This document shows positions 28,395-53,119 of a stretch of 64,000 nucleotides of DNA, piece after piece. The notes under the pieces are model-generated. The model saw only the letters and a program-made list of their open reading frames with translations, made no database searches and had not been told where the DNA came from. A program made the position numbers and the translations under genes. Position 1 is the stretch's first letter; every line of letters begins with the position of its first letter. The stretch comes from Octopus sinensis (lineage: Eukaryota). The stretch spans positions 84,010,001 to 84,074,000 of the forward strand of contig NC_043002.1 of NCBI RefSeq assembly GCF_006345805.1. The letters are read 5' to 3'.

Positions 28395-28752
28395 AACACA
28401 TAATTTCTAGGTAACTAAACACTTTTAAACTTCGTATACTGGTAGAATGTGTTTATAAAACATCTTTTTCTCTTGGCTTTATTGAGAAAATTCTATAGTT
28501 TGTAAGATATTTGGGGTTTTTTTCTTCAATTTCTGCAATTTCAACCAATCAATGACCGTCTATTGAGATGAAAACATTCTGTGCCGTATGAATATGTCCC
28601 TCATTTAAGAAACAGATTGGGTTTATTTACATTTGTGAAGAAAAAATAGATACCCTTCCCCCACCCCTAACCCTAAATCAGATTGAAATGCAATAGATCG
28701 ATACTAGGGTCGTAATTATGGGTGACAATGTCACATGACACCGAAAAGATCC
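28395..28752 (+). mobile_element. GGATC-ended MITE, truncated, with a 3' internal deletion
   Basis: Body matches the family; the right TIR is shortened. Confidence 0.75.
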
Positions 28753-29970: not shown

Positions 29971-30644
29971 AATTAAAGACTGCGTTGAAGCTATAGGAGC
30001 TATTCATCAGTAGCATGCTTTACACCGAGATAGCAGGATAATTGCTATTGTTTAAAGTAATTAATCAAATAAGTTTATTAAATGACAAACACTTGACATG
30101 TATACGATGACAATAATTTATACGATGGCATTACACATATGAGTGTGTGCATTTGTATGAGTATGTGTGAGTATACATGTGAGCATCCACGCACACGTGC
30201 TTTAACTGTACCCCCACCTCACCTCGGATTAATATAAATTATTCTCACAGCCTTTTTTTTCATGTTAGTCCGAAAAAGGATCTTTTCAGTTTGAACGGCA
30301 GTTTTTCTAGTGGTGTCATATGAAATTGTCACCCATAATTATGACCCTAGTATCGATCTATTGCATTTCAATCTGTTTTAGGGTTAGGGTTAGAGTTAGG
30401 GGTGGGGGGAAGGGTATTTTTTTTTCTTCTAAAATGTAAATAAACCCAATCTGTTTCTTAAACGAGGGACATATTCATACGGCACAGAATGTGTTTTTTA
30501 CCTCAATAGACGTCAGTGATTGGTTGAAATTGCAGAAAAAAAAACAAACAAATATCTTACAATCTGTAGAATTTTCTCAATAAAGCCAAGAGAAAAAGAT
30601 GTTTTATAAACACATTCTACCAGTATACGAAGATTAAAAGTGTT

Positions 30645-32758: not shown

Positions 32759-34994
32759 ATTATGTACAAAAAGAATTCATTGAGGAGTTTTTCCCTTTTT
32801 GTATTGTATACATGACTGTTCCAATATTTGACATGACTTTATTCATTAAAATTTCAAAACTTCATACAAGTTTATCGTCGTATTGTTATCATAGACAGCT
32901 ATCACGCATAAAATGTTAGCTTCCAAGTCGTTTTCTAATTAGGTAAAAATGATCAAGCTTTAAATCTAACATTTTACTAATTTTTTTTCCAGACACAAGT
33001 GAATAATAAAACCAGATTCGGCGTGAAAAATTACAACAACATACCAAATTTGAAAATTTTCACTAAATTTTAAAATTTCATAAACTGTGACGGCAACAGA
33101 AAAGATTTTTTAATTTTATAATAATAAAATGCTGTTACGATTATAGTTAATACAAATATTGCATTATTAATAACGCTCATATTAAAACAACCACCACGAA
33201 TGTTATTCTGATCGAAATTCATGGTTTGATACTGTAATTTTAGGATAGAGAGCTAGAGCTGACGAAGTGAACGAGTCGAAATCAGTTCTTCATATATTTA
33301 TAAACATTAAAAAGAAAACCCAGATGCGACGGTCATGTAGAGCAAAAAAATGAAGAAAAAAGAAAAGAAAAGAAAAAGAGTTTATTTCACAATATCATGT
33401 AAAGTTATTATATAACTAATATTTTTCTTTAGTCAAGCAAGTAAGATAAATGCAGCCTAATAAAGTAGCAAGGTTTTGAGTTATCTCCCTTCCTAGCTCT
33501 GCTAAAGAATTAAGTTGGCCAAAGACGTTTCTTTTTCGTAACGCATTCAACCATACTACAGTCATTTGTGATGTTAGAAACATTGGGTATAATTAAAAGA
33601 ACCCTTTTACATCCTTTAATTATGTTATTTTCAGTATTTTTGAGTCTCCTAATAGGTACATTTCAATCAGACCCAGTGTGACATTCTCACGGTCTGATTA
33701 CAGAGGTACAAGTTCTTGTTGCAGCTAATCTCACTCAGATTATGACCCAGACTTACTCTGAATAGAACATTTTGGATGATGAAAGATCAAAATCCTTTTA
33801 CATGTAGCAATATAACAAAGAGGCATATTTTGTATTGAGACAGTTGATTGATTCCTACCAAAGAAATAATGAACATAAACACAATTCAATTTTTTAATTC
33901 TTCTTCACTGCAAAAAAAAATTCTTTTGTGGAAAGAAACCAAGGATAGATTCAGTAAGACATGATGGTATGTGACCATCCACACTTTAATCTATAACTGC
34001 AACCAAGAATCTTGAGGAAGGAGCACTATTAATTACCCTGCATAATAATAAATGTGTGGAATACAAAGAATCTTGAAGAATATTTTCCCAGAAAGCCTCA
34101 GGCACAATTTTTTTGAAACAGTGAAAATTGCAGTTTTCCAAAGAATACAAATGCAGTAAGGATTGCCAAAAGAATATGGAAGTGTTGACTTGTACTTACA
34201 TCTGTACTTTCACATAATTTTGAGTCCTTGAAATATAAATGTCTTCATGGAATGATTAAATCTAGAAACTGTAAAACAACTGAAACATTCATGGATTTCA
34301 AATAGACTTCTTAGACTGTAATTTCATTTACATTAAACCAGCTTTACAGCAAAAAACCTGTTCCGTTCTGGCTCCTCTTCTCTAAGCATAAAGCTGCCTT
34401 ACATAGTTTTCCAAGCTGCGTGGTGACCGCACTAATGCTGATAGCACAAACAAAGCAGTAAAAGCATTTAGTATGCACTATAAAGTGGTTGGCAATACGC
34501 AGGGTATCCACTAAGTGAAACCATACCAAAGTAGACCGTGAAGCATAAAGCAGTCTTCAAAACCCTGGATCTTGTCAAACCATCCAACCCATGGAATATG
34601 GATGTTAAATAATGGTGATGATGATGATAATTATGCTAATGACTTAAGATAGAATGCAATTTCAACAGATTGGTGCTAATGTAGCTGTATGTTCTTTGAA
34701 GGCTAGCATTAACAGATTCAAGTATCTTCTTCACAAATGCCAAAATATGATCTGGATGGAAATATAAAGACTCAAATCTCTGACTCTCTTTTTTATCCAC
34801 ATAAAACTATATTTAAATGGCCAGAATCTCTGATTTATCAAAAAAAATGCTGTTTCAATGAAATATTAATGCAAAATTAACACACTAAATACTCTTGTAA
34901 TTAATGGTTGTTAATGAGTGCAGGTATAGCTGTGGGGTTAACAAGTTTGCTTTGCAACTGTGTGGTTCCGGATTTGGTCCCAATGAATAAGACC

Positions 34995-36343
34995 ACCACC
35001 TGGTCCTTACATGTCTTCAGCCAAGTTCACTCTATTGAAAGCATTCTGAACAAATCTATGGCTTGAAAATAACTTCTCCTAACCTCCTGCTAGTCTTATA
35101 GTATCCATAAAAAGTCAAAAACCCTAGTTTTTCCCCTTAGACTATGCCATAAAAAAATAAAATTATATATAACTGAGACATCAATAAAAGTGGTAAAATA
35201 TATTTAATTTATCTTTAATTCTTATAATATCAAATTAAAATATAATTTTATATAAATGTATGGTTACTCTTATATGTATGTAAGAGTTAACATTAGAGTT
35301 GAAAGTTAACTTTCCATTACTTCAGATGGATAAAAAGTATCCTCTTCAGTATCCCCGTTATATTTATCCTCTTCAGCACAGTTATCGTTGTTGTAATTAT
35401 CAAGTAATTTTAGGTCTAGAAGTTTAGGCTTAGGTCTCTGAAGAATATAGCACCAGGACATAAAACTATTGTTGTTGGAAATAACTGATATCTTTTCACG
35501 TTTGTAGACATCTGGATGTAGTTCAAACTCATCAAGTTGCTTGAGCATTTTCTCATCTACTTCATAGACTTCACCAGAAATAAACTGCAAAGAATACAAA
35601 AGTTATTGTAACACCACCAAGGAAAAGCAATTCTTGAAACATGTATGTTGATATTCATTGGTTAATCTCATCACAGCCCTAAGGTAAATTTTCCAGAAGT
35701 TCCAGAATACAGCAATTTTTAGACAAACACACAGAGAACAAGACTCAGTAAATTACCACTGACCAAATACCATTCATAAAACATATGTTGACTAACACAG
35801 TGCAATTTGGAGAGTGGAAACTTTGTTCTGAAGCCAGATATGTGTATGTGCATACACATGTGCATCTGTAAACTACTGTATATCAGTGTTCAGGAAATAC
35901 ATTGATGGACACTTCAATTTTCATTGTACCAATATGCATATATGTATACAAGCAAAACACAAAATCACAGCATAAGTACTTTTGGCATGACTCCTGTCAC
36001 AAACATTCTGTCAATTATGCAAATACTACTTTTATTCTTTCACAAAGTTGTCTTGTTTCACAAACTACAATCCTAGATTCCAAAATACCTTATTATTTGG
36101 ATGATTAGAGAAACACTGTTTCTAGCATGGGTGCAAGGCAAGAAATTTCAGGAAGGGGTTTGATTACATCAACCTCATTTCTTGACTGGTACTTTAATTT
36201 TATTGGTCCTGCAAAGATGTAATGCAAAATTGACCTTAACAGTATTTGAACTCGAATCATAAGAAGTGTGAACTGAATACTGCAAAACATTTTATCCAAC
36301 ACATTTTCAATTCTGCAAGTCTTTGCATGCTTAGAGACATAAG
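34995..36343. repeat. Tandem segmental duplication, copy B (GGACT last exon, 3' UTR and upstream intron)
   Basis: Aligns to 41794-43162, from ACCACCTGGTCCTTACATG to GCTTAGAGA. Confidence 0.92.
35306..35584 (-). CDS. GGACT: GGACT terminal coding exon, distal duplicate (2B): probable alternative last exon, or orphan exon
   Basis: Acceptor ttctttgcag|, phase 0, same length (279 nt), no stop or frameshift: FISGEVYEVDEKMLKQLDEFELHP... The putative catalytic Glu is retained. No exon-1 copy was seen between 36.3 and 41.8 kb. Confidence 0.8.
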   Translation of the reverse strand, partial: FISGEVYEVDEKMLKQLDEFELHPDVYKREKISVISNNNSFMSWCYILQRPKPKLLDLKLLDNYNNDNCAEEDKYNGDTEEDTFYPSEVMES

Positions 36344-36364
36344 TCTTTCTGCTACAAGCTCATT

Positions 36365-36866
36365 TTACAAGCTGTTCGCAAAGATGATTGCTGAATGGTT
36401 ATCTCTACAACTGGTTTAACAGCAGCTAAGAGAACAGGCAGGGTTCAGAAAGAAGTACAGCACTATAGATCATATTTTTACTCTAATGCAGTTGCTGGAA
36501 TGAGCAAGAGAGTACCAGTTGTCTCTATGCATTGTGTTCATTGATTATGAGAAAGCCTTTGACAACATCAAAATCAACACAGTACTGCAAAGCTCTCAGT
36601 AAACATGATGTGATGATGCAGAACGTCATCCTCCTTAGGGAAGCAAATACTGGGTGCCTAATGTTTGTGACCTGTTATCCTCAGTAGTGAATGTTCTGGT
36701 GAAGAAGGGTGTCAAGCAAGGAGACACCATCTCTCCTACGCTTTTCATGCCATGTCTCAAAATGGTCATTTGAGACATGAAATGTAATGGAAGCATAAGG
36801 ATAAATGGAGAGCTGCTCACCCATCTAAGATTTTCTGATGACATAGCGCTGATAGCATCACCCAAG
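36365..36866 (+). mobile_element. Degenerate RTE-clade RT fragment
   Basis: EQAGFRK..STIDHIFTL..FIDYEKAFD..GVKQGDTISP.LF..LRFSDDI motifs, with stops. Confidence 0.85.
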
Positions 36867-37290
36867 CATGATCATTGCCAGGGACACTGACTGGCCCCCA
36901 TGCTGGTGGCATGTAAAAAGCACCATTCAACCGTGATCATTACCAGCATCACCTTATTGGCACTTGTGCTGGTGGTATGTGAAAAACAACATTCAAGCGA
37001 GGGCATTGCCAGTGCTGCTGGACTGGCTCCTGTGCAGGTTACACATAAAAACACCATTTGAGTATGGTCACTGCCAGTACCGCCTGACTGGCCCTCATGC
37101 TGGTGGCATGTAAAAACACTCACTACACTCTCAGAGTGGTTGGCATTAGGAAGGGCATCCAGCTGTAGAAACTCTGCCAGATCAGATTGGAGCCTGGTGC
37201 AGCCATCTGGCTTACCAGTCCCCAGTCAAACCGTCCAACCCATGCCAGCATGAAAAGCGGACGTTAAATGATGATGATGATGATGATGAT
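36867..37290 (+). mobile_element. RTE-LINE 3' UTR fragment with (GAT)n tail
   Basis: Family 3' end; similar copies at 37810-38330 and 18228-18458. Confidence 0.75.
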
Positions 37291-40200
37291 TGAAAACTCT
37301 GTTCAAGAAGTAAGTAAAGAATATGTTCCAAAATTTTAATTCTGAATTTAATTTTTATTATAAAATTACATCTCTCAACAGCTAAATGCATCTGTTTTGG
37401 CTTTAGAATTATTGCATATATGTTCAAATGTTTTTCATTAAATCAAACCTTTTACTTTCTTTTTTCTATTTTTCATCATTCTGTCAAATACTTGAAATAG
37501 GAAAGTGGGACAAAATGAGTAATTTCCAATTTCTTGTAATTTTTACCCTATCTGTTTGAAACCATTACATTGCAAGTATTGCATGCCAATTCCATATCCC
37601 AAAGGCCTCATCTTTGGGAGTAAAAATTGGTCGGTATAGTTGTTGAAGTTGTGAGAGTTTGAAACATAAGATGACAGATACTCTTTTCCAAAAGTTTTGT
37701 GTCGACTTTGAGTTGACTGTAACTGAAGTTGTTAATAGAATATCTGGATAATTTTTGGTGGTTGAGGCAAGTGAAATCAATCAAAAGCAAAATCGAAATC
37801 AAAATCAAATTCGATGACTGGCATCCGTGCTAGCAGGGTGCAAAAAGCACCATACGTGATCATTGACAGAGCGGCTAAGCGGCTTCTGTGCCAGTGGCAC
37901 TTAAAGGGCACCATTCGAGTGTGATCGTTACCACTGTCGCCTTACTGACATTTGTGCCCGTGCTAGTAGGGCGCCAAGAGCACCATCCGAGTGTGATCAT
38001 TGCCAGAGCAACCAACTGGCTTCCGTGCCAGTGGCACGTAAAAGGGCACCATTTGAGTGTGATCATTACCAACGTCGCCTTACTGGCACCTGTGCTGGTG
38101 GCATGTGTAAAAGGATTACCAGTACTGCCTGACTGGCCCCCGTGCCGGTGGCACATAAAAAGCACCCACTACACTTTCGGAGTGGTTGGCATTAGGAAGA
38201 GCATCCAGCTGTAGAAACTCTGCCAAATCAAGATTGGAGCCTGGTGCAGCCATCTGGTTCGCCAGCCTTCAGTCAAAATCGTCCAACCCATGCTAACATG
38301 GAAAACAGACATTAAACGATGATGATGATAATTCTTTTCTCACTTGGATTCCACATCAATTTTTACCCACACTAATTTCAATTTCATAGTTTTCAAGTAT
38401 CAAAAAATGATGTCTAAAATGGGATAAAATGAGTAATATCTAATTTCAATAATTTCCTCTCTTTAATTACATTGTGCATAAATATATATGGAAGAAAGCC
38501 ACTCCAGCAGATCATGAAGAAGCTATAGTGAATATTTTATGTTGAGTTTTAAGATTTAGTCAAGTTTCATTAATTTCATATCATGTGTCATTTTTCTTTG
38601 TTTCTCTTTCATTTGATCAAGATATTTTACACTTTTTTTGCATTTCTGATGTCTAAGGATGGATACAGATGTGTATAAATCTTTTTCAAATGTAATTCCA
38701 GAGAAATGAAGAGGCTAATTTACCTTATCTTGTCTTACTCATTTTGTCTTTTATATGCTCAGAGAACAGTGATAATTTTCTGAAATAATGTTTTGGATAT
38801 GTTAGAGTGCTTTTACTGAATTTAGAGAAGGTCAATTTGCTTAGCTGATATTTTTTTTTTTTGTAAGATAGTGAACATTCTCTCATGCACCAAATGTCAA
38901 TTGCTAAAAAGCATTCGTGAAGTAAAATCATGTAGCAACACCGAATGGCAGTGCCCCAGCATGGCCACAGCTCGTGAGCTGAAACTAGATAAAATGATAA
39001 AATGATTCATAAGAAATATATTTGTTTTCAAAGTTAAAACTGCTGTAAATATTACTCATTGTGCACCCCCAACCACTCCTACTAGAAAGTGAAAAAGCAG
39101 ATTTTTATGGGAATAGCTGTCCCATATAAGTTTGAATTTCTGTTTCTATCGGGTTTTTCCCCTTCTTTTGTGCATTACAAAACAATGAAGGGAAGACTTT
39201 TGAAAAAAAAAATCTTTAAAAATCCATGTCTTTTAAATGTTGGTTTCCCCACCCCTTCACACACACATGCATTGTGCCTTTGGAACAGCAACAACCACTA
39301 AAATGACTTTCATTCTTTTTTGTAATATTCTATCATTTAATCATATTCTACATTCAGAAACATTTGAAAAATTTTAGCACCTCTCCTTCCTTCATTGTAC
39401 TTTTCACAATGAAGGAAAAGTCAAACACTGCAAGTGGATGTGTGGAAAACAAAATTTGAATTTTTAAACATGTATCTTATAAAGTGACATTTTCAGTTGT
39501 TTATTTAAAATAACTCATCAAATTCAATTACACTGAGATTTAAATTTGGTAATTTTCCAAGACTTTAATTCTTCCATATAAGGGGCCCACCAAACTTGAA
39601 GTGCCTCAGACCACCCATTGTTTAAATCCAATCTTGACTGTAGAACAACTGAAAGATTCATGAATTTCAAATAGTCTTCTTATATTGTAATTTCATTTAC
39701 ATTTAGGAGGCTTTGTAAAAATTCTATTGCGCTATTATCAGTTTCAGCCAGAGGTTGTGACCATGCTGGGGCACTGCCATTACTGCTAATGTTTGTTTAT
39801 TTTAGACTCACTTCCCAGTCCTGTTTTCAGAATTGGTCCTGGTGAAGAAATGAGTTGATCAGGGCTGTTCTTCTTTGCGTTTCTTGCAGTGATGTGTGAT
39901 GGGGATTTATCAGCTCTATCAGATAGAAATTTGTTTAATTTGTCTTTGAACACATCCATATCTACATCTGAGGCTTTTTGGCATAGTATTGAAAAGTTGC
40001 GAGTCTATGAAGCCTATTCTGATACAATAATGGACTTTACTCTGCGCGCCTTTCATCCTTCCAGGGTCGATAAATTAAGTACCAGCTACGCACTGGGGTC
40101 AATGTAATCAACTTAATACCTTTGTCTGTCCTAGGAAGATATGTGATGAAGTGGTGAAGCCTGATTTCAGGATTCTCAACCATATAGAGATGACAAGGGA

Positions 40201-41793
40201 CCAGTGACTGGTGATTTGTGGTTCTCAAGAAGACCCACCAAATTCAGCAAAACTAAGTTCTAGAAGCACAGTGTGAGCACATGTATGCACAACTGGACCT
40301 TTGCCCAATTTCCTCCTCAAAACACCACCACCAGTCATCTGCCTAATTACACTGTTTCCTTGATATCAGTAATCTTTTAACTACCCAAAATCATTTCACT
40401 CAGTATGCATCTTTTATGCTTAAATTGTTCTTCCCAACCCACCTTTTCTATCACCATATTTTTCACTCTCCCCATGTGCTATACCTATCTCTGTTCCTAC
40501 ACACTCTGGCAACTGACCCCACCATATGTCATTTCTCTCTGTTACCCTTTCCCTGTCTACTGTCTCATAATTATTATTCTGTTGCTATTCATTCATCTAT
40601 TCCTCAACACCTGTTTATCATTCTTTACACTGTGTAACAAAATTTAAAATTTTTTAAAATCTTTTTGGCTTATCAGTAAGTGCTATTTCCTATTTACTTC
40701 TATCTAGAATTACTATTATTCCCTTCAAACTTTGCTTATGTAACCAGGACATCAATGTTTTGAAACTAACCTATTTTCCATTACATTTCAGAGAGATTCA
40801 GCACTGAGTTGCTGAAGCAGAAATATCATTGTAGCAAATATTCTGTTTAATATCACAGACTTGCTTCACCTTAACCACTTGAGTATGTCCTTTAGTGGCT
40901 GACAATATATACATCTCTGATCATGAGCAAGAGTAGTGAGAGAGCATTATGGCCATGTATTGAGAAGGATTCTTTGGGATTTGAATAAACATAACAAATG
41001 CAAAGTTTGAAGGAAATATTAGCCATTTTTCATACTTTCTAGGAATAGGCAAATAGGAAATAACAGTTGCTACCCAAGGACAAAACTCATGTTACACAGT
41101 GTTATATTCATCCTTGGCAGCGAGTTGGCAGAATCGTCAGCACACTGGGCACAAAACTTAGAGTGATTTATTCCATCTTGTTATGTTCTGAGTTCCAATC
41201 CTGCTGAAGTCAACTGCTGAAGAAGCGTAGTTTTGTGGTTAGTTTATTCAGCTTATAATAATAAAGTTGTGAGTTCAATTCCTAGTGGCACATTGTGTCT
41301 TTGATCAAGACACATTACTTCATGTTGCTGTAGACCTCTCAATCAGCAAAAATGAGTTGCATCTGTAATTCAAAGGGTCAGCCTTTGTGTGTCACACTGA
41401 ATCTCCATGAGAACTACATTAAGGATAAACAAGTTTGTGGAGTGTTCAGTCACTTGCATGTTAATTTCACGAGCAAGCTTTTTCACTGATTGAATCAACT
41501 GGGCACCTTATCATCATAAATGATGGTGAACCAGTTATTATAGTCATGCCACTTAACTCATTCCCCATCCCTCACTTTCCCATAGAATGTCTATCCACCT
41601 ACACATTTCTTGTCTCCATTCACTTCATACCTGAAGGGCCACCCAGACACATTATCCTCAACATTTGTATTTTTTCCCCAGCTCCACCCAGATCATCACC
41701 ACCTTCTCTTTCAAAATATGAGTAGCTAAGAAACCTACTAGGGGGACTGTTCTTGTTGGGTGGCAGATTTAATCAGTCACCCAGTTTAATACT

Positions 41794-43162
41794 ACCACCT
41801 GGTCCTTACATGTCTTCAGCCAAGTTCACTCTATTGCAAACATTCTGAACAAATCTATGGTTCGAAAATAACTTCTCCCTTTCTCCAACTAGTCTTACAG
41901 TTCCATAAAAAGTTAAAAACCCTAGTCTTTCCCCCTTAGACTAAGCCATTAAAAAATAAAATTATATGTAGTTGAGACGTCAACAAAAGTGGTAAAATAT
42001 ATTTGATTTATCTTTAATTCTCATAAAATAAAATTAAAACATAATTTGATATAAATGTATGGTAACTCTTATACGTATGTAAGAGTTAACATAACATTAG
42101 AGTTAGAAGTTAACTTTCCATCACTTCTATTGAATAAGGAGAATCATCTTTAGTACGCCTCATATATTTATCCTCTTCAGCACGGGTATTGTTGTTGTAA
42201 TTATCAAGTAATTTTAGGTTTAGAAGTTTAGGCTGAGGCCTCTGAAGAATATAGCACCAGGACATAAAACTATTGTTGTTGGAAATAACTGATATCTTTT
42301 CACGTTTGTAAGTATCTGGATGACTTTCAAGTTCATCTAGTCGTTTGAGCATCTTCTCATCTACATCATAGACTTCACCAGATATAAACTGCAAAACATA
42401 TAAAAGTTATAATACTACTAAGGAAAAGCAATTCTCGAAACATTTATTTTGATATACATTACTTAATTTTATCCCAAATTTAAGGCATTTATATATATTG
42501 TGCTTAACTACAATCACTCAGGTAAATTTTCCATAAGTTCCAGGATACAGCAATTTTTAGACAAACACACAGAGAACAAGATTCAGTAAATTATCACTAA
42601 ACCAAATACCATTCATAAAACATATGTTGACTAACACAGTGCAATTTGGAGAGTGGAAGCTTTGTTCTGAAGTCAGACATGTGTATGTGCATCTGTAAAC
42701 TACTGTATATCAGTGTTCAGGAAATACATTGATGGACACTTCAATTTTCATTGTACCAATATGCATATATGTATACAAGCAAAACACAAAATCACAGCAT
42801 AAGTACTTTTGGCATGACTCCTTTCACAAACATTCTGTCAATTATGCAAATACTACTTTTATTCTTTCACAAAGTTGTCTTGTTTCACAAACTACAATCC
42901 TAGATTCCAAAATTCCTTATTATTTGGATGATTAGAGAAACAGCTGTTTCTAGCATGGGTGCAAGGCAAGAAATTTCAGGAAGGGGTTAATTGATTGCAT
43001 CAACCTCATTTCTTGACTGGTACTTTAATTTTATTGATCCTCCAAGGATGAAAGGCAACAGTATTTGAACTCAAATCATAAGAAGTGTTAACTGAATACT
43101 GCAAAACATTTTATCCAACACATTTTCAATTCTGCAAGTCTTTGCTTGCTTAGAGAAATAAA
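41794..43162. repeat. Tandem segmental duplication, copy A
   Basis: Direct repeat of 34995-36343, about 6.8 kb apart. Confidence 0.92.
42110..42388 (-). CDS. GGACT: GGACT terminal coding exon, proximal copy (2A)
   Basis: Acceptor ttttgcag|, phase 0, 92 aa plus TAA: FISGEVYDVDEKMLKRLDELESHP... Matches the GEVYxVD...LDxxE catalytic region; joined to exon 1 it gives 157 aa. Confidence 0.93.
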   Translation of the reverse strand, partial: FISGEVYDVDEKMLKRLDELESHPDTYKREKISVISNNNSFMSWCYILQRPQPKLLNLKLLDNYNNNTRAEEDKYMRRTKDDSPYSIEVMES

Positions 43163-44203
43163 CTTTTCTACAACAGGCACAAGGTGTTGAATTTTGTAGG
43201 GAGAGGAGAGTTGATTACATTGACCCCAGTGTTCAAGTGGTACTTAATCTATTGACTTGGAAAAGATGAATGGTAAAGTCAACTTCAGCAAAATTTGAAC
43301 TCAGAATAGAAAGCCAGAAAAATGCTGCTAAGAATTTTGTCTAGCTTGCTAACAATCCTGGCAGCTCACCACCCATTGCTTAGAGAGACATGATGAAATG
43401 ATTTGATATAAAAATAAAATTAAAATGACATAAGACTACAATAGAAGACACTTTATCAAAGTGATGCTCAGCAGGATTGAAATCAGAACCCTATGGTTGC
43501 AAAGTGAAATTCTTAATGACGTAGACATGCTACAAGTTTGTACTTGCCACTTGTAGTGGACAGAGCGATCATTGTAACCACCCTGCAGAGATTTTCAAAC
43601 TGGACCCTAAAACCTATGCATTTCTGCCTTTTATTAAGAATTATAAATTCCAAGAGGAGTGTACCAGAAACATTGGCACATCAGCAAAAATGCTTGGCAG
43701 TAATTTTCCAACCCTCTCATGTTCTGAATTCGAATACCACCAAGATCAACTATGCCTTTCATCTACACGGTGTCTATAAAATAAAGTACTGGCCATCTAC
43801 TAGAGCTGATGTAATCGACTTACTCTCCTCCTCTAATACTGCTGGTCTTGAACCAAAATTTGAAGCTGTTAAAGATGGCAAACTGGCAGAATGTTAGCAG
43901 GCTGAAAATACTTAGTAGCATCTCTTATGGCATTACATCCTAAGTTCAAAGTCTGCCAGAGTTAACTTTCCTTACATTCTTTCAGGATTGATAAAATAAC
44001 AATAGGTTGAGCATTGAAGTCAAGGTAATGTACTAGGCCATCCCCAAAATTCAGGCCTTGTGTCTATCGTAGAAAGGATTATGAATTATAAATTTTCATC
44101 TTGTTAACATTTCTGCTTGCAAGTTCAAGTTTGAGAAAATGCGCACCTTTCCACTTTTTGTTTTAACATTTATTCTCCCTTCTCTCCAAAGACTTGTTTC
44201 CAA

Positions 44204-44510
44204 CTAGCAGTATCGCCCGGCGTTGCTCGGGTTTGTAAGGGAAATAACTATATAAGCATTTTTAGAGAGTTACTTCCCTTATATAACCCGAGAAAAAAAT
44301 CATTAAAAATGCGGAAAAATGATGGTAAATTTTTTTTTAATCGTAGACTCATCATAGACGCACGCTAATACCCAGAAGGGCTCGATATGAATGATGACTA
44401 TAAGATACCTGCTTTTGGTTAAACTGCACCGCAAAATGTGGGAGTAGTTAGGAATCTAAATCGGAGGAGACAGAGTCTCACACACACAACTTCAATTTTA
44501 TATATAAAGA
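44204..44510 (-). mobile_element. Short non-autonomous Helitron
   Basis: Minus strand A|TCTTTATATATAAAA ... CCCGAGCAACGCCGGG..CTAG|T; body matches ~5458-5690. Confidence 0.88.
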
Positions 44511-45336
44511 TATCCTCTTGTTTGGTTTCACTCCAAATGTTTTATCTTGACATTAAGGAAGATAGATGTCATTTAGAACATATATTATTTGCTTCTGATA
44601 GACATTAATTAAAGGCCAAAATTTTAGCACCGACTGTCAAAACTAAAAGGCTGATAACTTATTCTTTTTAACTTGGTTTGACAAGCTATAAACTATAGTA
44701 GTTCTCTTGATTTGAATGGCTAAACTACTTCTGATATTTTGATTCTTTTATCAAGAAAAGTATTTATAAAAAAAATTTTATGAAGTAAATCTTAGTAAGT
44801 TAAGCAAAGTGTTGCATTGTTAATCTTTGTACTGATAAAATCCTATTTGTAATCAACACTTCTAGATATAGTTTGAGCTATTCTTCAGATGATAACACTA
44901 TTTATGTATACTGTTTATATTAGGCGGATTGATGTCTTCATCTTTCCTGTTGATTTCACTGTTGTATCCTCCAGCCTTCTTCAGGTGTCTTGTGTTGAAC
45001 TCAGTTGTTTTATCAGAATTTTGAACCCATCCCTTTATTTGATCTGCAGAGGTCCACTATTCTCATTACACTCTCTGTGTTTTCTGACTTTCTTTTATTT
45101 ACTTCACTCTCTTTACTCTTTTACTTGTTTCAGTCATTTGACTGCGACCATGCTGGAGCACCACCTATAATCGAGCAACTCGACCCCAGGACTTATTCTT
45201 TTGTAAGCCCAGTACTTATTCTATCGGTCTCTTTTGCTGAACCGCTAAGTAACGGGGACAAAAATACACCAGCGTCGGTTGTCAAGCAATACTAGAGGGA
45301 CAAACACAAACACACAAGCACACACACGCATATATA

Positions 45337-47150
45337 TCATCATCATCATCATCATCATCATCGTTTAACGTCCGCTTTCCATGCTAGCATGGGTTGGATG
45401 GTTCAACTGGGGTCTGGCAAGCCCGAAGGCTGCACCAGGCCAGTCAGATCTGGCAGTGTTTCTACAGCTGGATGCCCTTCCTAACGCCAACCACTCCGAG
45501 AGTGTAGTGGGTGATTTTATGTGCCACCGACACAGATGCCAGACGAGGCTGGCAGACGGCCACGCTCGGATGGTGTTTTTTATGTGCCACCGACACAGGT
45601 GCCAGACGAGGCTGGTAGACGGCCACGCTCGGATGGTGTTTTTTATGTGCCACCGACACAGGTGCCAGACGAGGCTGGCAGACGGCCATGCTCGGATGGT
45701 GTTTTTTTTTGTGCCACCGACACAGGTGCCAGACGAGGCTGGCAGACGGCCACGCTCGGATGGTGTTTTCCTATGTGTCACCGGCACAGGTGCCAGACGA
45801 GGCTGGCGAACGGCCACGCTCGGATGGTGTTTGTTACGTGCCCTCAGCATGGAGGCCAGTCGATGCGGTACTGGCTACGGTCACGTTCAGATGGTTTTCT
45901 TATGTGCCACCGGCACTGGTACCATAAAAGGATACAAATAGGATACGAATTCCATTGATGTACATCTATTTTGATTTGGTTTTGATTTTGATTTTCACTT
46001 GCCTCAACAGGTCTTCTCAAGTGTCACAATAAGGAAGGTATGCACAGGTGGACTGACTACGTCCCAGGTAGGGGCCACGGGATATGGCTTCACTAGTCTT
46101 GCCAGGTCTTCTCACGCACAGCATACTTCCATAGGTCTCGGTCTCTAGTCATTTCCATGGTGAGACCTAACGTCCGAAGGTCGTGCTTCACCACCTCGTC
46201 CCAGGTTTTCCTGGGTCTACCTCTTCCACGGGTTCCCTCAACTGCTAGGGATTGGCACTTTCTCACACACCTATCTTCATCCATTCTCGCCACATGACCA
46301 TACCAGCGCAATCGTCTCTCTTGCACACCACAACTGATGCTTCTTAGGTACAACATTTCTCTCAAGGTACTAACGCTCTGTCGAGTAAGTACACTGACAT
46401 TACACATCCATCGGAGCATACTGGCTTCATTCTTCACGAGCTTACGCATGTCCTCAGCAGTCACAGCCCATGTTTCACTGCCATGTAGCATAGCTGTTCG
46501 TACACATGCATCATACAGTCTGCCTTTTACTCTGAGCGAGAGGCCTTTAGTCACCAGCAGAGGTAAGAGCTCCCTAAACTTTGCCCAGGCTATTCTTATT
46601 CTAGCAGTTACACTTTCAGCGCACCCACCCCCACTACTGACTTGGTCACCTAGATAGCGGAAGCTATCAACTACTTCTAGTTTTTTCCCCCCGGAAAGTG
46701 ACGGAAGTTGTTTTCTGCAGATTTTCGGAGGTCAATGCTCCTGAGCATCTGCCACATACAAAAACTATCTTCCCAGTTAGCCTACCTTTGACATTGCTGC
46801 ACCTCTTATGTGTCCATAGCTTACACTGGGTACATCTTATAGAGTTTCTACCTACACCTTTTCTACAGATCGAGCAGGGCCATCTTCCTGAGGATATTTG
46901 TGGATTGTCTACCTTTCTACTTATTAGTACTTTGGTTTTAGCTAGGTTGACTCTAAGGTCCCTCGATTCTAAACCCTCCTTCCACACCTGGAACTTCTGC
47001 TCCAGTTCTGATAGTGACTCAGCAATTAGAGCGAGGTCGTCAGCATAGAGGAGCTCCCAAGGGCAGCCTGTCTTGAATTCCTCCACAATTGCCTGGAGGA
47101 CTATGATAAATAGGAGGGGGCTGAGTACTGAACCCTGGTGGACCCCAATA
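45337..47150 (-). mobile_element. 5'-truncated RTE-clade LINE, relatively young, in the GGACT intron
   Basis: GVHQGSVLSP, LLYADDL, an internal Cys-rich segment and LHGSETW..RRLRWYGHV; 3' UTR and (GAT)n tail; catatata TSD. Interrupts a SINE (45115-45330 and 47150-47315). Confidence 0.92.
45515..45835. repeat. 63-bp tandem repeat (x5) in the LINE 3' UTR
   Basis: gtgccacc recurs at 45521, 45584, 45647, 45711 and 45775. Confidence 0.9.
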
Positions 47151-47985
47151 CATATATACAACGGGCTTCTTTCAGTTTCCGTCTACCAAATCCACTCACA
47201 AGGCTTTGGTCGGCCCAAGGCTATAGTAGAAGACACTTGCCCAAGGTGCCACGCAGTGGGACTGAACCCGGAACCATGTGGTTGGTAAACAAGCTACTTA
47301 CCACACAGCCACTCCTTCAGTCGATTTTTTTTGTGAATTATTTTAATGTCTTGCTTGGGATTGAACTCAAAACCTCTAGGTGGCTGTACAGCATTAACCA
47401 ATTCGTTTTGACTCGAAAAAATGTACACACTGAATTCTGTAGTTTTCGTGGGGTGTTACTCTGAAAATTTACCCTTGTTTTCCGCGAAAAAAAAAAATCC
47501 GATTGTTTTTGTTTTTTTCCTTAAAGAAAATTGTGCTGGTGAAAAGATCAATGGGGTTGGGGGTGAAATTTCTGAGGCTTCCACCTCACCCTGTTTTTCG
47601 GACCAAAACGGTTTTCACAACTCATTAGCTTTCTCTTCTCATTCTCTTGTCAACTGACACGTGATCACGGAATCAAGTCAAAACGAAAGAGAGCCATTAT
47701 TTCTATCATATATCGCAATAAAATGAACAAATATAATAAATTTTATTTTTAAAAAATAGATTAAAAACAATCAAGAATTCACAGAGGAATCGTTAAGTCA
47801 ATATTTCGGGACCCTTGTATTGGGCTGGTACCACGTAATTTCCCTACACACACTGAGTTCTTAAAAATCTAAAACTTTTTAGGGGCGGAGGTATAGAATA
47901 CTAACCGTTTCGCCAAGAAAATTAAAATCAATTTTATGTTTAGATTATTTTGTGTTTCGAGATTCACTGTTCCAAGAAATATATA

Positions 47986-48478
47986 CCGTAAATCCTCAAG
48001 TATAATCTGCATTTTTTCCCCAAAATTTAAAGGTCAAAATCTCTAGTGCGTATTATACACGAGGTTAAAAAAATTATTTTCTAAGCAATGTTCAAGCCTC
48101 TATTTGCTGTCCGGCAATGTTTATTCAGACACAAATTTTGTGATGTTGGGCGCGAAAATACCTTAAGCTAAGCCTGAAAGCAATGAAGTCATAAAAGAAT
48201 CATCTATAACTTGCAGTAAGCAACATTTATTAAACATTATTACTGTTATTTCTTTATTTTCTGCAAACAAAATGCACAAAAAAGCTATACGTTTGCATTA
48301 TGTTATATATACAATAATAATAAAGGACGTTATCGTATACATTTTTACAAACCAAGGACGTTATATAGACCTCCTTGACTCAAGTTAGAGAAGGGGTGCG
48401 TATTATACACAAGGTTTAGGCTTTTCAGAGGTACAGCCCCCTAAAAATCCCCTGCGTATTATACTCGAGGATTTACGG
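47986..48478. mobile_element. Tc1/mariner-superfamily (Tc2/pogo-like) MITE
   Basis: TA|CCGTAAATCCTC(A/G)AGTATAAT TIRs at both ends. Confidence 0.8.
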
Positions 48479-49293
48479 TGTTTATAAAGTAACAAGTTTC
48501 AAAACGAAGCAAAAATTATAAACTTTTCAATAATTATCAAGCACGTGTAATACTATATATACATCTAAATTGTTACCATATACGAGTCATGTATTGTCAA
48601 TTTGTAAGTACATTATTGTTTCAATACTTTATAATTTATATTTTACTGAAATGAACTGTTTGCCTTGTGAGAACCACCAATGGATATCACTGCTTGTTTG
48701 GCAAACTTAATGGCAACAGGTTGGCGAGGCACGTTGGGAACTATTATCCCTCCACTTCCAAGTTCATTTCTGAATTTGGCAGGAGTTATAACCAAAAGAC
48801 GGGTTCACATGGGGCCATTATGGTAATTGTTCCTGACTGCTATTCAGTCACAGTATAAAAACAAAAAAAGCTGATGACAAGCTGGAGTGTTGACATCATT
48901 TATTTAAACTTTACACGTTTTCATTCATAAAATAATAATAATAAAAAAATCAAATGAAAAATGTCATGTATATTATTGAAATATAATATAGATGGCATCT
49001 GTCATTCGTGTGATTTTCTGAATTTATTTACTCGGTAAGTTATAATCCAGAAAAAGTCACCAATTCGGTGAACTCCGTTACAGTACTTCGGTCGATCAAC
49101 CATTTATAACTATGGTAAATTTACTTCCTGGTTCGTCAAAATTTACAAGTCAAAGAATAAAATATAAATAAAACAAAGAATAAAATGTTAAATCTAAATT
49201 TCTCAAAGTTGTTAAGCGTATTTTTATTTCCTGTAACTGTTTAATTTTTTGTTTACTAGAAATAAGGGATAAATGGCAAACCGAGGAGTTAAC

Positions 49294-49730
49294 TTATTTC
49301 TTTATTGCCCACAAGGGGCTAAACACAGAGGGGACAAACAAGGACAGACAAATGGATTAAGTCGATTACATCGACCGCAGTGCGTAACTGGTACTTAATT
49401 TATCGACTCCGAAAGGATGAAAGGCAAAGTCGACTTCGGCGAAATTTGAACTCAGAATGTAACAGCAGACCAAATATTTATTTCTTTACTACCCACAAGG
49501 GGCTAAACACAGAGAGGACAAACAAGGACAGACAAACGGATTAAGTTGATTACATCGACCCCAGTGCGTAACTGGTACTTAATTTATCGACCCCGAAAGG
49601 ATGAAAGGTTAAGTCGACCTCGGCGGAATTTGAACTCGGGGCGTAACGGCAGACGAAATACTGCTACGCATTTCGCCCGGCGTGCTAACGTTTCTGCCAG
49701 CTCGCCGCCTTAAAAACAATTACGAACTTG
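49294..49730 (-). mobile_element. Dimeric Nin-domain SINE in GGACT intron 1
   Basis: 13-bp TSD ccgaggagttaac (49281-49293 and 49731-49743). Confidence 0.85.
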
Positions 49731-50075
49731 CCGAGGAGTTAACCGACAAGAAAAAGTTGGAAGATTACTGCATTAGATTATTAGTCTTGTTACGGTTGGA
49801 GCATCTTTGATCACATATCGAGAAAGACCCAGGGCTAAACAACAACGTAAACACGAGTGACGTATATATATATATCGAAACTATGTAAAATGCATCGGCA
49901 TTCGTACATTGTTTAATGTCTCATTTTTCAAAACTGAAATTACATTAATTTAATCTTGAATGGGATCGTGGATTTTTTCGGTTTGAACGGCAGTTTTTAA
50001 CATAATTTCTAAGTAACTAAAGATCCTGGATCGTTAAAAAATACAATAAAATAAATTTGGTGTATTAACACTTAC

Positions 50076-50270
50076 GTTTCCTTTCCCTTCAAATGGTAAC
50101 AGAAAAGGGATGTTATATTGAGAAGCAACGACCAACGGGTATCGAAGGGCAGTAGTTGCATCGCCTATAAATTTAGCCAAACCATGTGTTACATTTTCTA
50201 ACACAAAATGATTGGGTTGACCACGTTTGAGTGTACCATAGACGAAGACACGTTCCAGTTGAACCGTCAT
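50076..50270 (-). CDS. GGACT: GGACT-like (gamma-glutamylamine cyclotransferase / AIG2-like), coding exon 1
   Basis: ATG at 50270 gives MTVQLERVFVYGTLKRGQPNHFVLENVTHGLAKFIGDATTALRYPLVVASQYNIPFLLPFEGKGN (65 aa), with the VFVYGTLKRGQPNH and YPLVV...NIPFL motifs of GGACT/A2LD1. Ends at a phase-0 donor AAC|GTAAGT. The longer track ORF starts at TTG, not ATG. Confidence 0.95.
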
Positions 50271-50817
50271 GATCAGAAGTAAACATACAATAAAGGATAG
50301 GGCGATGTTTCGCAAAACTTGTGCTACGACAACCGAAACGTTGCCAAGGATAGTAAACAAATTAGAGCAATCCTTCGATATAACTCGACAAAACTTTGAC
50401 AATTCTACACTTCTTTTCGGATATCTTCGTGACCTCTGTAACAGCTACTGCGAACTCTGTGTGTGTGTGTGCGCGCGCGCTTGTTCTTGTCTCTGTGTGT
50501 GCCTGTTCTATCACGAAGATATCCGATGTGAATTGTCGAATTGTCACGGAAACAGCCGAGTGTTTGTTTTGGTTTTGTGGAAGGAAACATTTGCTTTGAA
50601 GTGAGAGAGGAAAGTGAAAGATGTATGTACGTGTATATGAAGAATAGTGTGTGTACGTGTGCGCGCGCGCGGTTTTTCTTTTTATCAGCACACAAACACA
50701 TACACCCATTATCTTTCATATACATGTACATACATATGCATGCACCTTTTTTGTATGTGTATGCATATGTGAGTGAAGGTGTGTGTTCTTGTGTATGTAT
50801 TTTTTGACACATTTGTG

Positions 50818-52110
50818 TCATCATCATCATCATCATCGTTGAACGTCCGTTCTCCATGCTAGCATGGGTTGGACAGTCCGATCAAGGATCTGGGAAGCCG
50901 GAAGGCTGCACCAGGCTCCAGTCTGATCTGGCAGTGTTTCTACAGCTGGATGCCCTTCCTAACGCCAACCTCTCCGTTAGTGTAGTGGGTGCTTTTTACG
51001 TGCCCCCGGCACAGGTGCCAGGCGAGTCTGGCAATAGCCACGATTGGATTGGTGCTTTTTACGTACCACCGGCACGGAAGCCAGTCAAGGTGGTGTTGGC
51101 ATCAGCCATGTTCGGATGGTGCTTTTTATGTGCCACCGGCACGGAAGCCAGTCAAGGCGGCGCTGGCATCGACCACATTCAGATGGTGCCTTTTAGGTGC
51201 CACCGGCCCAGGGATCACAACTACAGTTTCCATTGATTTTTGATGTTGGTGTACTTGACTCAATAGATCTCCTCAAGCACAGGGTCGAAACGGTGTTTCT
51301 TTACTTGCCACCTGCACAGGAGTCAGTCCAGCAGCACTGGCAACTGCCGGGTGCCAGTCATAGGATTGGTTCAATTTCGATTCCGATTTCACTTGCCCCA
51401 ACAGGTCTTCACAAGCAGAGTTTAGTGTCCAATGGAGGGAGGTTGGCATGGGTGCCAGTCATCGGATGAGGTTCGATTTCGACTTCACTTGCCTCAACAG
51501 GTCTTCGCGTGTCCAAGGAAGGAAAGGCATGCATAAGTGGGCTGGCTACATCCTTGGCAAGGGACATGGGATGGACTCACTTGTCCTGCCAGGTCTTCTC
51601 ACGCACTGCATATTTCCAAAGGTCTCGGTCACTAGTCATTGCCTCGATGAGACCTAAAGTTCAAAGGTCATGCTTCACCACCTCGTCCCAGGTTTTCCTG
51701 GGTCTACCTCTTCCACGTATACCCTCAACCGTTAGGGATTGGCACTTTTTCACACACCTATCTTCATCCATTCTCGCCACATGACCATACCAGCGCAATT
51801 GTCTCTCTTGTACACCACAGCTGATGCTTTTTAGGTCCAACTTTTCTCTCAAGGCACTTACACTCTGTCGAGTATGTACACTGACATTACACATCCATCG
51901 GATCATACTGGCGTCATTCCTCGTGAGCTTACGCATGTCCTCAGCAGTCACGGCCCATGTTTCACTGCCATGTAGCATGGCTGTTCGTACACATGCGTCA
52001 TACAGTATGCCTTTTACTCTGAGCGAGAGGCCTTTAGTCACTAGCAGAGGTAAGAGCTCTCTGAACTTTGCCCAGGCTATTCTTACTCTAGCAGTTACAC
52101 TTTCAGCACA
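50818..52110 (-). mobile_element. 5'-truncated RTE LINE
   Basis: CAESVTARVRIAWAKFRELL...RWYGHV...GRPRKTW, 3' UTR and (GAT)n tail. Confidence 0.9.
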
Positions 52111-53119
52111 CCTAAACACTGAAGATGTACAGAAAACAAGATTCCATCACATGCCAGGGGGAAAAACTAGAAATTGTTGATAGCTTCTGTTACCTAGGTG
52201 ACCAAGTCAGTAGCGGGGGTGGATGCTCTGAGAGCAAAACTACTAGAATAAGATAAGAATAGCCTGGGCAAAGTTCAGAGAGCTGATAACAAAGGGCCTC
52301 TTGCTCAGAGTGAAAAGTAGACTTTGATGCATGTGTGCAAACTGCCATGCTACACGGCAATGAAACATGGGCTGTGACTACTGAGGACATGCATAAGCTT
52401 GAAAGAAATTAAGCTAGTATGCTCCACTGCACGTGTAATGTCAGTGTACATGCACAACAGAGTGTAAGCACCCTGAGAGAAAAGTTGGACATAAGAAGCA
52501 TCAGATATGCGCTGGTATGGTCATGTGTTGCATATGGATGGGGACAGTTGTGTGAAGAAGTGTCACACCCTAACAGTGGAAGGAACCTGTGGAAGAGGTA
52601 GACCCAGGAAGACCTGAGATGAAGTGGTGAAGCACAACCTTCAAATGTTGGGCCTCGCAGAGGCAATGAAAAGCGACCGAGACCTTTGGAGATGTTCTGT
52701 GCTTGAAAAGACCCAGCAAGCCAAATGAGATTGTAGCCATGGCCGATGCTATTAGAAGACCTGTTGAATCAAGTGAAATTGTTGTCATGGCCGATGCCAG
52801 TGCTGCCTAGTTGGTACCTGTACTGGTGGCACATAAAGCACACCATTCGAGTGTGGGTGATGCCAGTGCTGGTGGCACGTAAAAAAGCACCATTCAAGAG
52901 TGGTCGGTACCAGTGCCACCTGACTGGCTCCTGTGCTGGTGGCACGTAAAAAGCACCACTACATTGCCGGAGTGGTTGGTGTTAGGAAGGGCATCCAGCT
53001 GTAGAATCCTTGCCAGATCAGATTGGGGCCTGGTGCAGCCTCCGAGGTTGCCAGTCCTCAGTCAAACCATCCAACCCATGCCAGAATGAATAGCAGACAT
53101 TAAACAGTGGTGATGATGA
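52111..53119 (+). mobile_element. 5'-truncated, more degenerate RTE LINE
   Basis: Same region of the family on the opposite strand, with stops and frameshifts; has its own tail. Confidence 0.85.

What the first reader, a model, noticed from the sequence alone, without database searches (positions are those of the whole stretch)
35306..50270. GGACT with one first exon and two intact duplicated last exons: a likely isoform switch by alternative last exon
Seen: one exon 1 (phase 0) and two 279-nt terminal exons, each with a strong polypyrimidine-CAG acceptor, an open frame and a TAA stop; no second exon 1 was found between them. Manual count: 19 of 92 aa differ and the LDExE Glu is kept in both. 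The C-terminal tail swaps charge, from basic YMRRTKDDSPYSIE (2A) to acidic YNGDTEEDTFYPSE (2B), and the residues next to the Glu differ (LESHPDT vs FELHPDV). Established: GGACT cyclises gamma-glutamyl-amines such as gamma-glutamyl-epsilon-lysine from transglutaminase crosslinks. Inference: one promoter could make two enzymes with the same N-half but a different C-half and 3' UTR, possibly with different substrate preference.
Basis: partly seen in the sequence, partly recalled or inferred. Interest (0 to 1): 0.75.

Follow-up and report, generated by a model that had tools for sequence, protein, structure and literature searches.

The report
Octopus GGACT gene, two alternative last exons
An octopus gene for a small gamma-glutamyl-amine-recycling enzyme has one first exon and two duplicated, interchangeable last exons that give two enzyme versions; this is real, but public genome annotation already lists both versions, so it is an ordinary case of a known kind.

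Summary
On the minus strand there is one exon 1 (50270..50076), two homologous 279-nt terminal exons (2A 42388..42110, 2B 35584..35306), 19 of 92 residues differing, and no second exon 1 anywhere in the 64 kb. The window is Octopus sinensis chromosome CM016864.1. E1+2A and E1+2B are exactly RefSeq "putative gamma-glutamylcyclotransferase CG2811" isoforms X1 and X2. O. bimaculoides (X1/X2) and O. vulgaris carry the same pair. Argonauta hians has a single last exon within 10 kb. The exon duplication is therefore Octopus-lineage, older than the sinensis/bimaculoides split, and not an assembly artefact. Both isoforms keep all nine GGACT active-site residues and fold as GGACT (TM 0.80-0.88 to the human and mouse enzymes). 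Twelve positions differ consistently between 2A and 2B, including L85F beside the catalytic Glu86. The segment after active-site Tyr140 has charge +1 in 2A and -4 in 2B in all three species. Exon 2B and exon 1 are under purifying selection (dN/dS 0.29 and 0.24). Exon 2A evolves near-neutrally (0.94). I saw no junction reads, and different substrate preference remains untested. Verdict: real, interpretation supported, already annotated, low interest.

The parts
50076..50270 (-). Exon 1 coding part (65 codons, phase 0, donor GTAAGT at 50075..50070). It encodes the N-terminal 41% of the enzyme, including active-site Y11-G12-T13-L14 and I54.
   Evidence: It is the only exon-1-like sequence in the window.
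42110..42388 (-). Terminal exon 2A (92 codons + TAA, acceptor ...TTTTGCAG). It has the basic tail YMRRTKDD and gives RefSeq isoform X1.
   Evidence: The ortholog is found in O. vulgaris (100% aa) and O. bimaculoides (79% aa). dN/dS sinensis-bimaculoides is 0.94.
35306..35584 (-). Terminal exon 2B (92 codons + TAA, acceptor ...TTCTTTGCAG). It has the acidic tail YNGDTEED and gives RefSeq isoform X2.
   Evidence: The ortholog is found in O. vulgaris (99% aa) and O. bimaculoides (91% aa). dN/dS is 0.29.
41787..43173 (-). Duplicated segment, copy A: about 780 nt of upstream intron, exon 2A and about 320 nt of 3' flank.
   Evidence: Self-blastn; per-region identities.
34988..36357 (-). Duplicated segment, copy B: about 770 nt of upstream intron, exon 2B and about 320 nt of 3' flank.
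35694..36039 (-). Intronic tract upstream of 2B (-110..-455). It is 97% identical to its counterpart upstream of 2A (about 42498-42866), which is more alike than the sinensis-bimaculoides orthologs (92.8%). It is absent upstream of 2B in O. bimaculoides. It is probably homogenised by gene conversion.
42013..42018 (-). ATTAAA hexamer 92 nt after the 2A stop, a candidate poly(A) signal. It sits at the same offset in O. vulgaris and O. bimaculoides.
   Evidence: This is weak evidence, because such hexamers are frequent in 63% A+T DNA.
35203..35219 (-). Two ATTAAA hexamers 87 and 98 nt after the 2B stop, candidate poly(A) signals. They are present in O. vulgaris but not in O. bimaculoides.
46667..47161 (-). 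Reverse-transcriptase fragment of a retrotransposon inside intron 1. It is filler, not part of the gene's function.
   Evidence: Pfam RVT_1 E=1.6e-13; a related copy lies at 51472-52112.

Best explanation
This is the single GGACT-family gene of Octopus sinensis (RefSeq 'putative gamma-glutamylcyclotransferase CG2811'). A tandem duplication of its last exon took place in the Octopus lineage, after the split from Argonauta and before the O. bimaculoides / O. sinensis-vulgaris split. It left two homologous terminal exons, each with its own 3' splice site, stop codon and 3' UTR. One promoter and one exon 1 donor (50076) splice either to the proximal exon 2A or to the distal exon 2B. This gives two 157-aa enzymes that share residues 1-65 and differ at 19 of the remaining 92. 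The swapped half carries the catalytic Glu86 and active-site Tyr92, Tyr111 and Tyr140, all kept in both. The choice is presumably made by competition between two routes: splicing to 2A with polyadenylation after it, or continued transcription and splicing to 2B. That is the ordinary alternative-last-exon mechanism. Shown here: the anatomy, homology, phylogeny, conservation, fold, and identity to annotated isoforms. Inferred: that both junctions are used in vivo (from annotation pipelines that need transcript support), the mode of choice, and any functional difference.
For: Anatomy. Exact identity of both spliced products to RefSeq isoforms X1 and X2 of O. sinensis, and the same pair in O. bimaculoides and O. 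vulgaris. The O. vulgaris alternative forms derive from PASA on Iso-Seq/RNA-seq: (PMC10700109). Argonauta hians has one exon 1 and one exon 2, with no second copy within 10 kb downstream. NJ tree: 2A clade 97% and 2B clade 86% bootstrap, both inside Octopus. Paralog dS is 0.21-0.39 against ortholog dS 0.13. Purifying selection on 2B (0.29) and E1 (0.24), jointly p=0.0036 against neutrality. All 13 family-invariant or near-invariant exon-2 positions are kept in all six copies. Pfam GGACT scores 89.5 and 87.9 bits against a cut-off of 22.8. AF2 models have pLDDT 82.6 and 85.2 with identical secondary structure. Best PDB matches are mouse and human GGACT, TM 0.80-0.88. Active-site residue list: (PMC2954230), mapped.
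Against: I could not inspect any junction-spanning read. No transcript-derived contig carrying either product is in the collection, only the genome records. Exon 2A shows dN/dS 0.94 between O. sinensis and O. bimaculoides (24.7 nonsynonymous and 6.3 synonymous changes, indistinguishable from neutral), so the X1 isoform may be under weak constraint. The poly(A) hexamers are weak evidence, and the one after 2B is not conserved in O. bimaculoides. GGACT activity has never been assayed for an invertebrate member, to my knowledge.
Confidence: 0.85

Rival explanations
1. Only one isoform matters. The distal exon 2B is the constrained, working last exon, and the proximal exon 2A is a copy under relaxed constraint. 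It is still spliced and annotated, but it is drifting towards loss.
For: dN/dS is 0.94 for 2A against 0.29 for 2B and 0.24 for exon 1. Fisher test of 2A against 2B+E1 gives p=0.039, and 2A is not different from neutral. 2A has the longer branches in the tree.
Against: 2A keeps an intact 92-codon frame with no indel, its acceptor and all 13 family-invariant positions in three species. With 19 changes, the chance of missing all 13 is 0.039. Its RRTKDD tail motif is identical in O. sinensis and O. bimaculoides. It is the product called X1 in two RefSeq annotations. The counts are small.
Confidence: 0.15
2. Exon 2B is the remnant of a whole-gene tandem duplicate, either with its own unrecognised first exon or not expressed at all. 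The X2 model would then be a pipeline artefact.
For: No read evidence was seen here. The spacer between 2A and 2B is 6.5 kb in O. sinensis.
Against: No exon-1-like sequence lies anywhere in the 64 kb. In O. bimaculoides 2B starts only 340 nt after the 2A stop, which leaves no room for another first exon. 2B is the better conserved of the two exons. 2B begins in the middle of a beta-strand of the fold (residue 66; strand 65-74), so it cannot make an enzyme without exon 1. Three independent annotations join E1 to 2B.
Confidence: 0.03
3. Assembly artefact: two haplotypes of one last exon were assembled in tandem.
Against: The copies are only 87% identical in the exon. The same two exon types, with the same diagnostic residues, occur in the same order in three species assembled independently. 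Each copy groups with its ortholog and not with its neighbour.
Confidence: 0.01

Closest known systems
Mammalian gamma-glutamylamine cyclotransferase GGACT / A2LD1 (PDB 3JUB, 3JUC, 3JUD, 1VKB, 2KL2)
   Same: Same Pfam family (PF06094) and the same fold (TM 0.80-0.88, 38-41% identity). All nine active-site residues listed for the mouse enzyme have counterparts in both octopus isoforms: Y7 G8 T9 L10 I50 E82 Y88 Y115 Y143 (PMC2954230) correspond to Y11 G12 T13 L14 I54 E86 Y92 Y111 Y140.
   Different: The octopus proteins run 17 residues past the last active-site Tyr. The mammalian sequence in the alignment (Microcebus) ends 6 residues after it. The octopus C-terminal 59%, catalytic Glu included, comes in two alternative versions. 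Enzyme activity was not tested for the octopus proteins.
Alternative last exons, and alternative exons born by tandem exon duplication (general phenomenon; from my own knowledge of the literature, e.g. Kondrashov and Koonin 2001, Letunic et al. 2002)
   Same: Two homologous neighbouring exons are used alternatively with a common upstream exon. Each terminal exon brings its own stop and 3' UTR.
   Different: Most described duplicated alternative exons are internal and mutually exclusive. Here both are terminal, so the choice is coupled to 3'-end formation rather than to a downstream splice.
Mutually exclusive exon clusters controlled by competing RNA structures (Dscam1 exon 6, 14-3-3 zeta type; from my own knowledge)
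   Same: Tandemly duplicated exons with duplicated intronic flanks. Here a 350-nt tract upstream of both exons is 97% identical.
   Different: No sequence in the gene is complementary to both upstream tracts. The best inverted matches are 11-40 nt with E about 0.004-3, and none is shared. No docking/selector system was found.
Argonauta hians ortholog (GAB1611133.1)
   Same: Same two-exon coding structure with the phase-0 intron at the same place (EGKGK|L), and 60% identity.
   Different: It has a single last exon. Its tail is basic (+2 over the 141-147 equivalent), like 2A and unlike 2B.

Membership tests
GGACT / AIG2-like gamma-glutamylcyclotransferase family (PF06094) | Significant match to the family profile above the curated cut-off | tested here: met
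   89.5 bits (E1+2A) and 87.9 bits (E1+2B) against a cut-off of 22.8.
GGACT / AIG2-like gamma-glutamylcyclotransferase family (PF06094) | GGACT fold | tested here: met
   AF2 models have pLDDT 82.6 and 85.2, pTM 0.80 and 0.81. Only the E1+2A model was put through Foldseek. Its top hits are 1vkb, 3juc, 3jud and 3jub, E about 1e-13, TM 0.80-0.88.
GGACT / AIG2-like gamma-glutamylcyclotransferase family (PF06094) | Catalytic Glu (human/mouse Glu82) and the other eight active-site residues (YGTL motif, Ile50, Tyr88, Tyr115, Tyr143) | tested here: met
   Y11 G12 T13 L14 I54 E86 Y92 Y111 Y140 are present in both isoforms and in all three Octopus species.
GGACT / AIG2-like gamma-glutamylcyclotransferase family (PF06094) | Cyclotransferase activity on gamma-glutamyl-amines and not on gamma-glutamyl-amino acids | not testable with these tools
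   This needs recombinant protein and an enzyme assay.
Alternative last exon gene architecture | One shared upstream exon with a donor, and two downstream exons each with an acceptor, an in-phase open frame and a stop | tested here: met
   The same holds in O. vulgaris and O. bimaculoides.
Alternative last exon gene architecture | Transcripts that carry each junction | not testable with these tools
   Support is indirect only. RefSeq X1/X2 models exist in two species. By my own knowledge, not checked here, Gnomon makes extra variants only with transcript support. PASA-derived alternative forms exist in O. vulgaris. No transcript contigs are in the collections searched.
Alternative last exon gene architecture | A separate polyadenylation site after each terminal exon | tested here: inconclusive
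   ATTAAA lies at +92 (2A) and at +87/+98 (2B). It is conserved for 2A in three species and for 2B in two. Such hexamers are common in A+T-rich DNA, and no 3'-end data were available.
Tandem exon duplication | Homology of the two exons and of their flanks, same orientation, adjacent | tested here: met
   1.37 kb of collinear homology. In O. bimaculoides the copies lie 616 nt apart, start to start.
Tandem exon duplication | Both copies kept by selection | tested here: inconclusive
   2B has dN/dS 0.29. 2A has 0.94, yet its frame and invariant residues are intact.
Mutually exclusive exons with competing RNA structures | A docking site complementary to selector sequences upstream of each alternative exon | tested here: not met
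   No shared inverted match was found within 34900-50300.

The most novel reading that the evidence does not exclude
The duplication has produced two catalytically competent GGACT enzymes with different specificity or partners. The 12 isoform-diagnostic positions include L85F next to the catalytic Glu86, position 134 in the segment that lines the active-site cavity in the mouse enzyme, and a conserved charge inversion (+1 against -4) in the flexible tail directly after active-site Tyr140. In this reading the fast evolution of 2A reflects adaptive change and not decay.
Probability: 0.2. Interest if true: 0.4.

Novelty: already known. Interest (0 to 1): 0.18.

Why it matters
The finding matters little beyond the gene itself. 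It is a clean, datable example of tandem duplication of a terminal exon creating two versions of the catalytic half of a small enzyme from one promoter. The isoform-specific tail charge is conserved across Octopus species. The two copies evolve at unequal rates, and there are signs of gene conversion in the intronic flank. If the isoforms did differ in substrate range, that would say something about gamma-glutamyl-amine (transglutaminase product) turnover in octopus. Nothing here shows that. Both isoforms are already in RefSeq, so the scan adds no new gene model.

Tried and rejected
- **Second exon 1.** I searched the whole window with tblastn (E up to 10) and blastn (word 7). None was found.
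- **Assembly or haplotype artefact.** Rejected, because three species share the arrangement and each copy groups with its ortholog.
- **Competing RNA structure (docking/selector).** I searched for inverted matches to both upstream tracts within the gene. Only chance-level hits appeared.
- **Transcript evidence in the protein and contig collections.** Clusters of both products hold only genome-derived entries, with no run-assembly contigs.
- **Literature.** No paper in the library mentions the accessions or discusses this gene in cephalopods. The hits for 'GGACT' together with 'cephalopod' looked unrelated by title and abstract, probably primer strings, and I did not open them.
- **Recurrence in other animals.** I tried to see whether 'isoform X' GGACT entries of other animals also use duplicated last exons. 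Aplysia and Bradysia were not on record. Branchiostoma showed one model only. This was uninformative.
- **N-terminal extension in O. bimaculoides.** The 22-aa hydrophobic extension in the O. bimaculoides models was considered as a possible signal peptide. The upstream ATG and the frame are not conserved in O. sinensis or O. vulgaris, so I treat it as an annotation choice within the 5' leader.
Full report
**Observation**

Reading the minus strand confirms the anatomy described.
- Exon 1 runs 50270..50076. It has 195 nt (65 codons, MTVQLERVFVYGTLKRGQPN...EGKGN) and is followed by GTAAGT.
- Exon 2A runs 42388..42110 and exon 2B runs 35584..35306. Each is 92 codons plus TAA, and each follows a pyrimidine-rich tract ending in GCAG.
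- tblastn of exon 1 against the whole window finds only itself; the next hit has E=1.3. A blastn with word size 7 finds nothing else inside the exon except one 14-nt chance match at E=4.7. So there is no exon-1 paralog between the two last exons or anywhere else in the 64 kb.
- The homology is not confined to the coding part. Self-comparison gives two collinear blocks, 34988-36357 and 41787-43173, about 1.37 kb at 87-92% identity.

**Identity of the locus**

- A protein search returned a 100% match for E1+2A and an 89% match from Octopus.
- An exact look-up shows that E1+2A is XP_029638373.1/XP_036360007.1, [quoted passage not shown]. It is also CAI9724073.1 of O. vulgaris.
- E1+2B is XP_036360008.1, isoform X2 of O. 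sinensis.
- The gene sits on CM016864.1 at 84035306-84070270 of assembly GCA_006345805.1. That range is exactly the finding's coordinates. Two models share one start, one ending at window 42110 and the other at 35306.
- O. bimaculoides also has isoforms X1 (basic tail) and X2 (acidic tail).
- O. vulgaris has two models that share exon 1. The paper describing that annotation states that alternative splice forms were added by PASA from Iso-Seq and RNA-seq alignments (PMC10700109).
- By my own knowledge, not checked here, NCBI's Gnomon likewise makes extra variants only with transcript support.
- I could not inspect reads. The collections hold no transcript-derived contig for either product.

**Age and mode of the duplication**

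Exon positions in the related loci:

| Species | Exon 1 | Exon 2A | Exon 2B | Note |
|---|---|---|---|---|
| O. vulgaris | 10001 | 16097 | 22218 | about 6 kb between 2A and 2B |
| O. bimaculoides | 10067 | 14035 | 14651 | only 340 nt between the 2A stop and the 2B start |
| Argonauta hians | present | one last exon | none | no second copy within 10 kb downstream |

- The phase-0 intron position is the same in all of them.
- A neighbour-joining tree of the exon-2 nucleotides groups the three 2A copies (97% bootstrap) and the three 2B copies (86%), with Argonauta outside.
- Synonymous divergence is 0.21-0.39 between paralogs and 0.13 between sinensis and bimaculoides orthologs.
- The duplication therefore arose in the Octopus lineage after the split from Argonauta and before the bimaculoides/sinensis split. 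This also disposes of the assembly-artefact rival.

Identity varies along the duplicated unit in O. sinensis:

| Region | Paralogs (2A vs 2B flank) | sinensis-bimaculoides orthologs |
|---|---|---|
| Last 110 nt of intron | 80% | 93% (2A), 89% (2B) |
| Exon | 87.5% | 89% (2A), 95% (2B) |
| Intron tract -110..-400 | 97% | 92.8% (2A) |

- The high paralog identity continues to about -455. The whole -110..-455 tract is missing upstream of 2B in O. bimaculoides.
- The middle third of the exon has 3 paralog differences in O. sinensis against 11 in O. bimaculoides.
- I read this as sequence exchange (gene conversion) between the copies in the sinensis/vulgaris lineage, plus a spacer deletion in O. 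bimaculoides. The alternative, a short ancestral unit extended later, is not excluded.
- The 6.5-kb spacer and intron 1 of O. sinensis are filled with dispersed repeats and a reverse-transcriptase fragment.

**What the protein is**

- Both products match Pfam GGACT far above the cut-off.
- By sequence, the nearest solved structures are mouse and human gamma-glutamylamine cyclotransferase.
- AlphaFold models of both isoforms are confident (pLDDT 82.6 and 85.2, pTM 0.80 and 0.81) and have the same secondary structure.
- I ran only the 2A model through Foldseek. It superposes on 1VKB, 3JUC, 3JUD and 3JUB with TM 0.80-0.88.
- The mouse active site is given as Tyr7, Gly8, Thr9, Leu10, Ile50, Glu82, Tyr88, Tyr115 and Tyr143, with residues 11-13, 79-81, 84, 133-142 and 144 lining the cavity (PMC2954230).
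- With the +4 offset of the HMMER alignment and the invariant columns of a 15-sequence alignment, these residues become Y11, G12, T13, L14, I54, E86, Y92, Y111 and Y140.
- The first five lie in exon 1. The last four, including the catalytic Glu, lie in the alternative exon and are kept in all six Octopus copies.

**How the isoforms differ**

- Twelve positions separate all 2A from all 2B copies: 73, 81, 85, 87, 134, 142, 143, 145, 146, 149, 151 and 152.
- Position 85 (Leu in 2A, Phe in 2B) corresponds to a cavity residue next to the catalytic Glu. Position 134 lies in the cavity-lining segment.
- The segment 141-147 directly follows active-site Tyr140. Its net charge is +1 in 2A and -4 in 2B in all three species. 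Argonauta is +2, so the acidic tail of 2B is the derived state.
- This tail is modelled with low confidence (pLDDT about 60). In the alignment, the one mammalian sequence (Microcebus) ends six residues after the equivalent Tyr.
- A difference in substrate or partner preference is thus structurally plausible but is only an inference.

**Selection**

Between O. sinensis and O. bimaculoides:

| Exon | dN/dS | Nonsynonymous : synonymous changes | Test against neutral |
|---|---|---|---|
| Exon 1 | 0.24 | 4 : 5 | jointly with 2B, p=0.0036 |
| Exon 2B | 0.29 | 8 : 6 | jointly with exon 1, p=0.0036 |
| Exon 2A | 0.94 | 24.7 : 6.3 | not different from neutral |

- 2A differs from 2B plus exon 1 at p=0.039 (Fisher test).
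- Against simple decay, 2A keeps its frame, its acceptor and all 13 family-invariant positions. The chance of that with 19 changes is 0.039.
- The counts are small. I leave a 15% rival that 2A is a weakly constrained, drifting copy and that 2B is the exon that matters.

**Mechanism**

- The best-supported account is the ordinary alternative-last-exon one.
- The exon 1 donor pairs either with the proximal acceptor, followed by cleavage and polyadenylation after 2A, or with the distal acceptor once transcription has passed 2A.
- Candidate ATTAAA signals lie at +92 after 2A and at +87/+98 after 2B. Such hexamers are frequent in this A+T-rich DNA.
- I looked for a docking/selector arrangement of the kind that governs some duplicated exon clusters and found none.

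**Comparison and novelty**

- The protein is a regular member of the GGACT family, and the gene architecture is a regular alternative last exon born by tandem exon duplication.
- No paper in the library discusses it. However, both isoforms are in RefSeq for two species and in the ENA annotation of a third.
- I rate it already known, with low interest.
- Beyond the annotation, this analysis adds five things: the dating of the duplication, the conserved charge inversion next to Tyr140, the unequal evolutionary rates of the two exons, the homogenised intronic tract, and the compact 616-nt arrangement in O. bimaculoides.

Noticed in passing
L001 (O. bimaculoides) 10001-10066, compared with window 50271-50420: The O. 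bimaculoides RefSeq models start 22 codons upstream with a hydrophobic, signal-peptide-like stretch (MSRFNLIVLISLLSFVLCLPLI). The upstream ATG lies in sequence that does not align with O. sinensis or O. vulgaris. O. sinensis also carries an insertion of about 53 nt in the leader relative to the other two. The extension is therefore probably 5' UTR.
   Followed up: partly
window 35694-36357 and 42498-43173: The intronic tract upstream of the two last exons is 95-97% identical between the copies. That is more alike than the exons (87.5%) and more alike than the sinensis-bimaculoides orthologs. The part beyond -455 (36040-36357) is missing upstream of 2B in O. vulgaris, and the whole tract is missing there in O. 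bimaculoides. Gene conversion is likely. Whether the tract has any splicing-regulatory role is unknown.
   Followed up: partly
window 6323-7642 (-): A 439-aa open reading frame with long poly-Asn and poly-His runs and no Pfam match. It could be a large coding exon of a low-complexity protein or a chance ORF in repeat-rich DNA.
   Followed up: no
window 5706-6227 (+): An ORF fragment with a Pif1 helicase 2B domain (E=2.6e-15). It looks like a remnant of a Helitron-type or Pif1-like element.
   Followed up: partly
window 45515-45924: A tandem array with a period of about 63 nt inside intron 1, open in several frames on both strands. It is flanked by copies of a short dispersed repeat, about 200 nt long, that occurs at 10 or more places in the window (for example 120-316, 18274-18458, 37088-37289, 38133-38332, 50818-51161, 52863-53119).
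   Followed up: no
window 17600-20400, 28400-28743, 30278-30644: A repeat of about 410 nt is present three times at about 1.2-kb spacing (17601-18009, 18873-19278, 19992-20397; 89-95% identity). There are two more copies, one of them inverted. It may be a satellite-like or composite element.
   Followed up: no
window 46093-47161 (-) and 51472-52119 (-): Retrotransposon remnants (RVT_1 E=1.6e-13 plus a PHD-like zinc finger). They lie on the gene's strand, one inside intron 1 and one upstream of exon 1, and are 89% identical to each other.
   Followed up: partly
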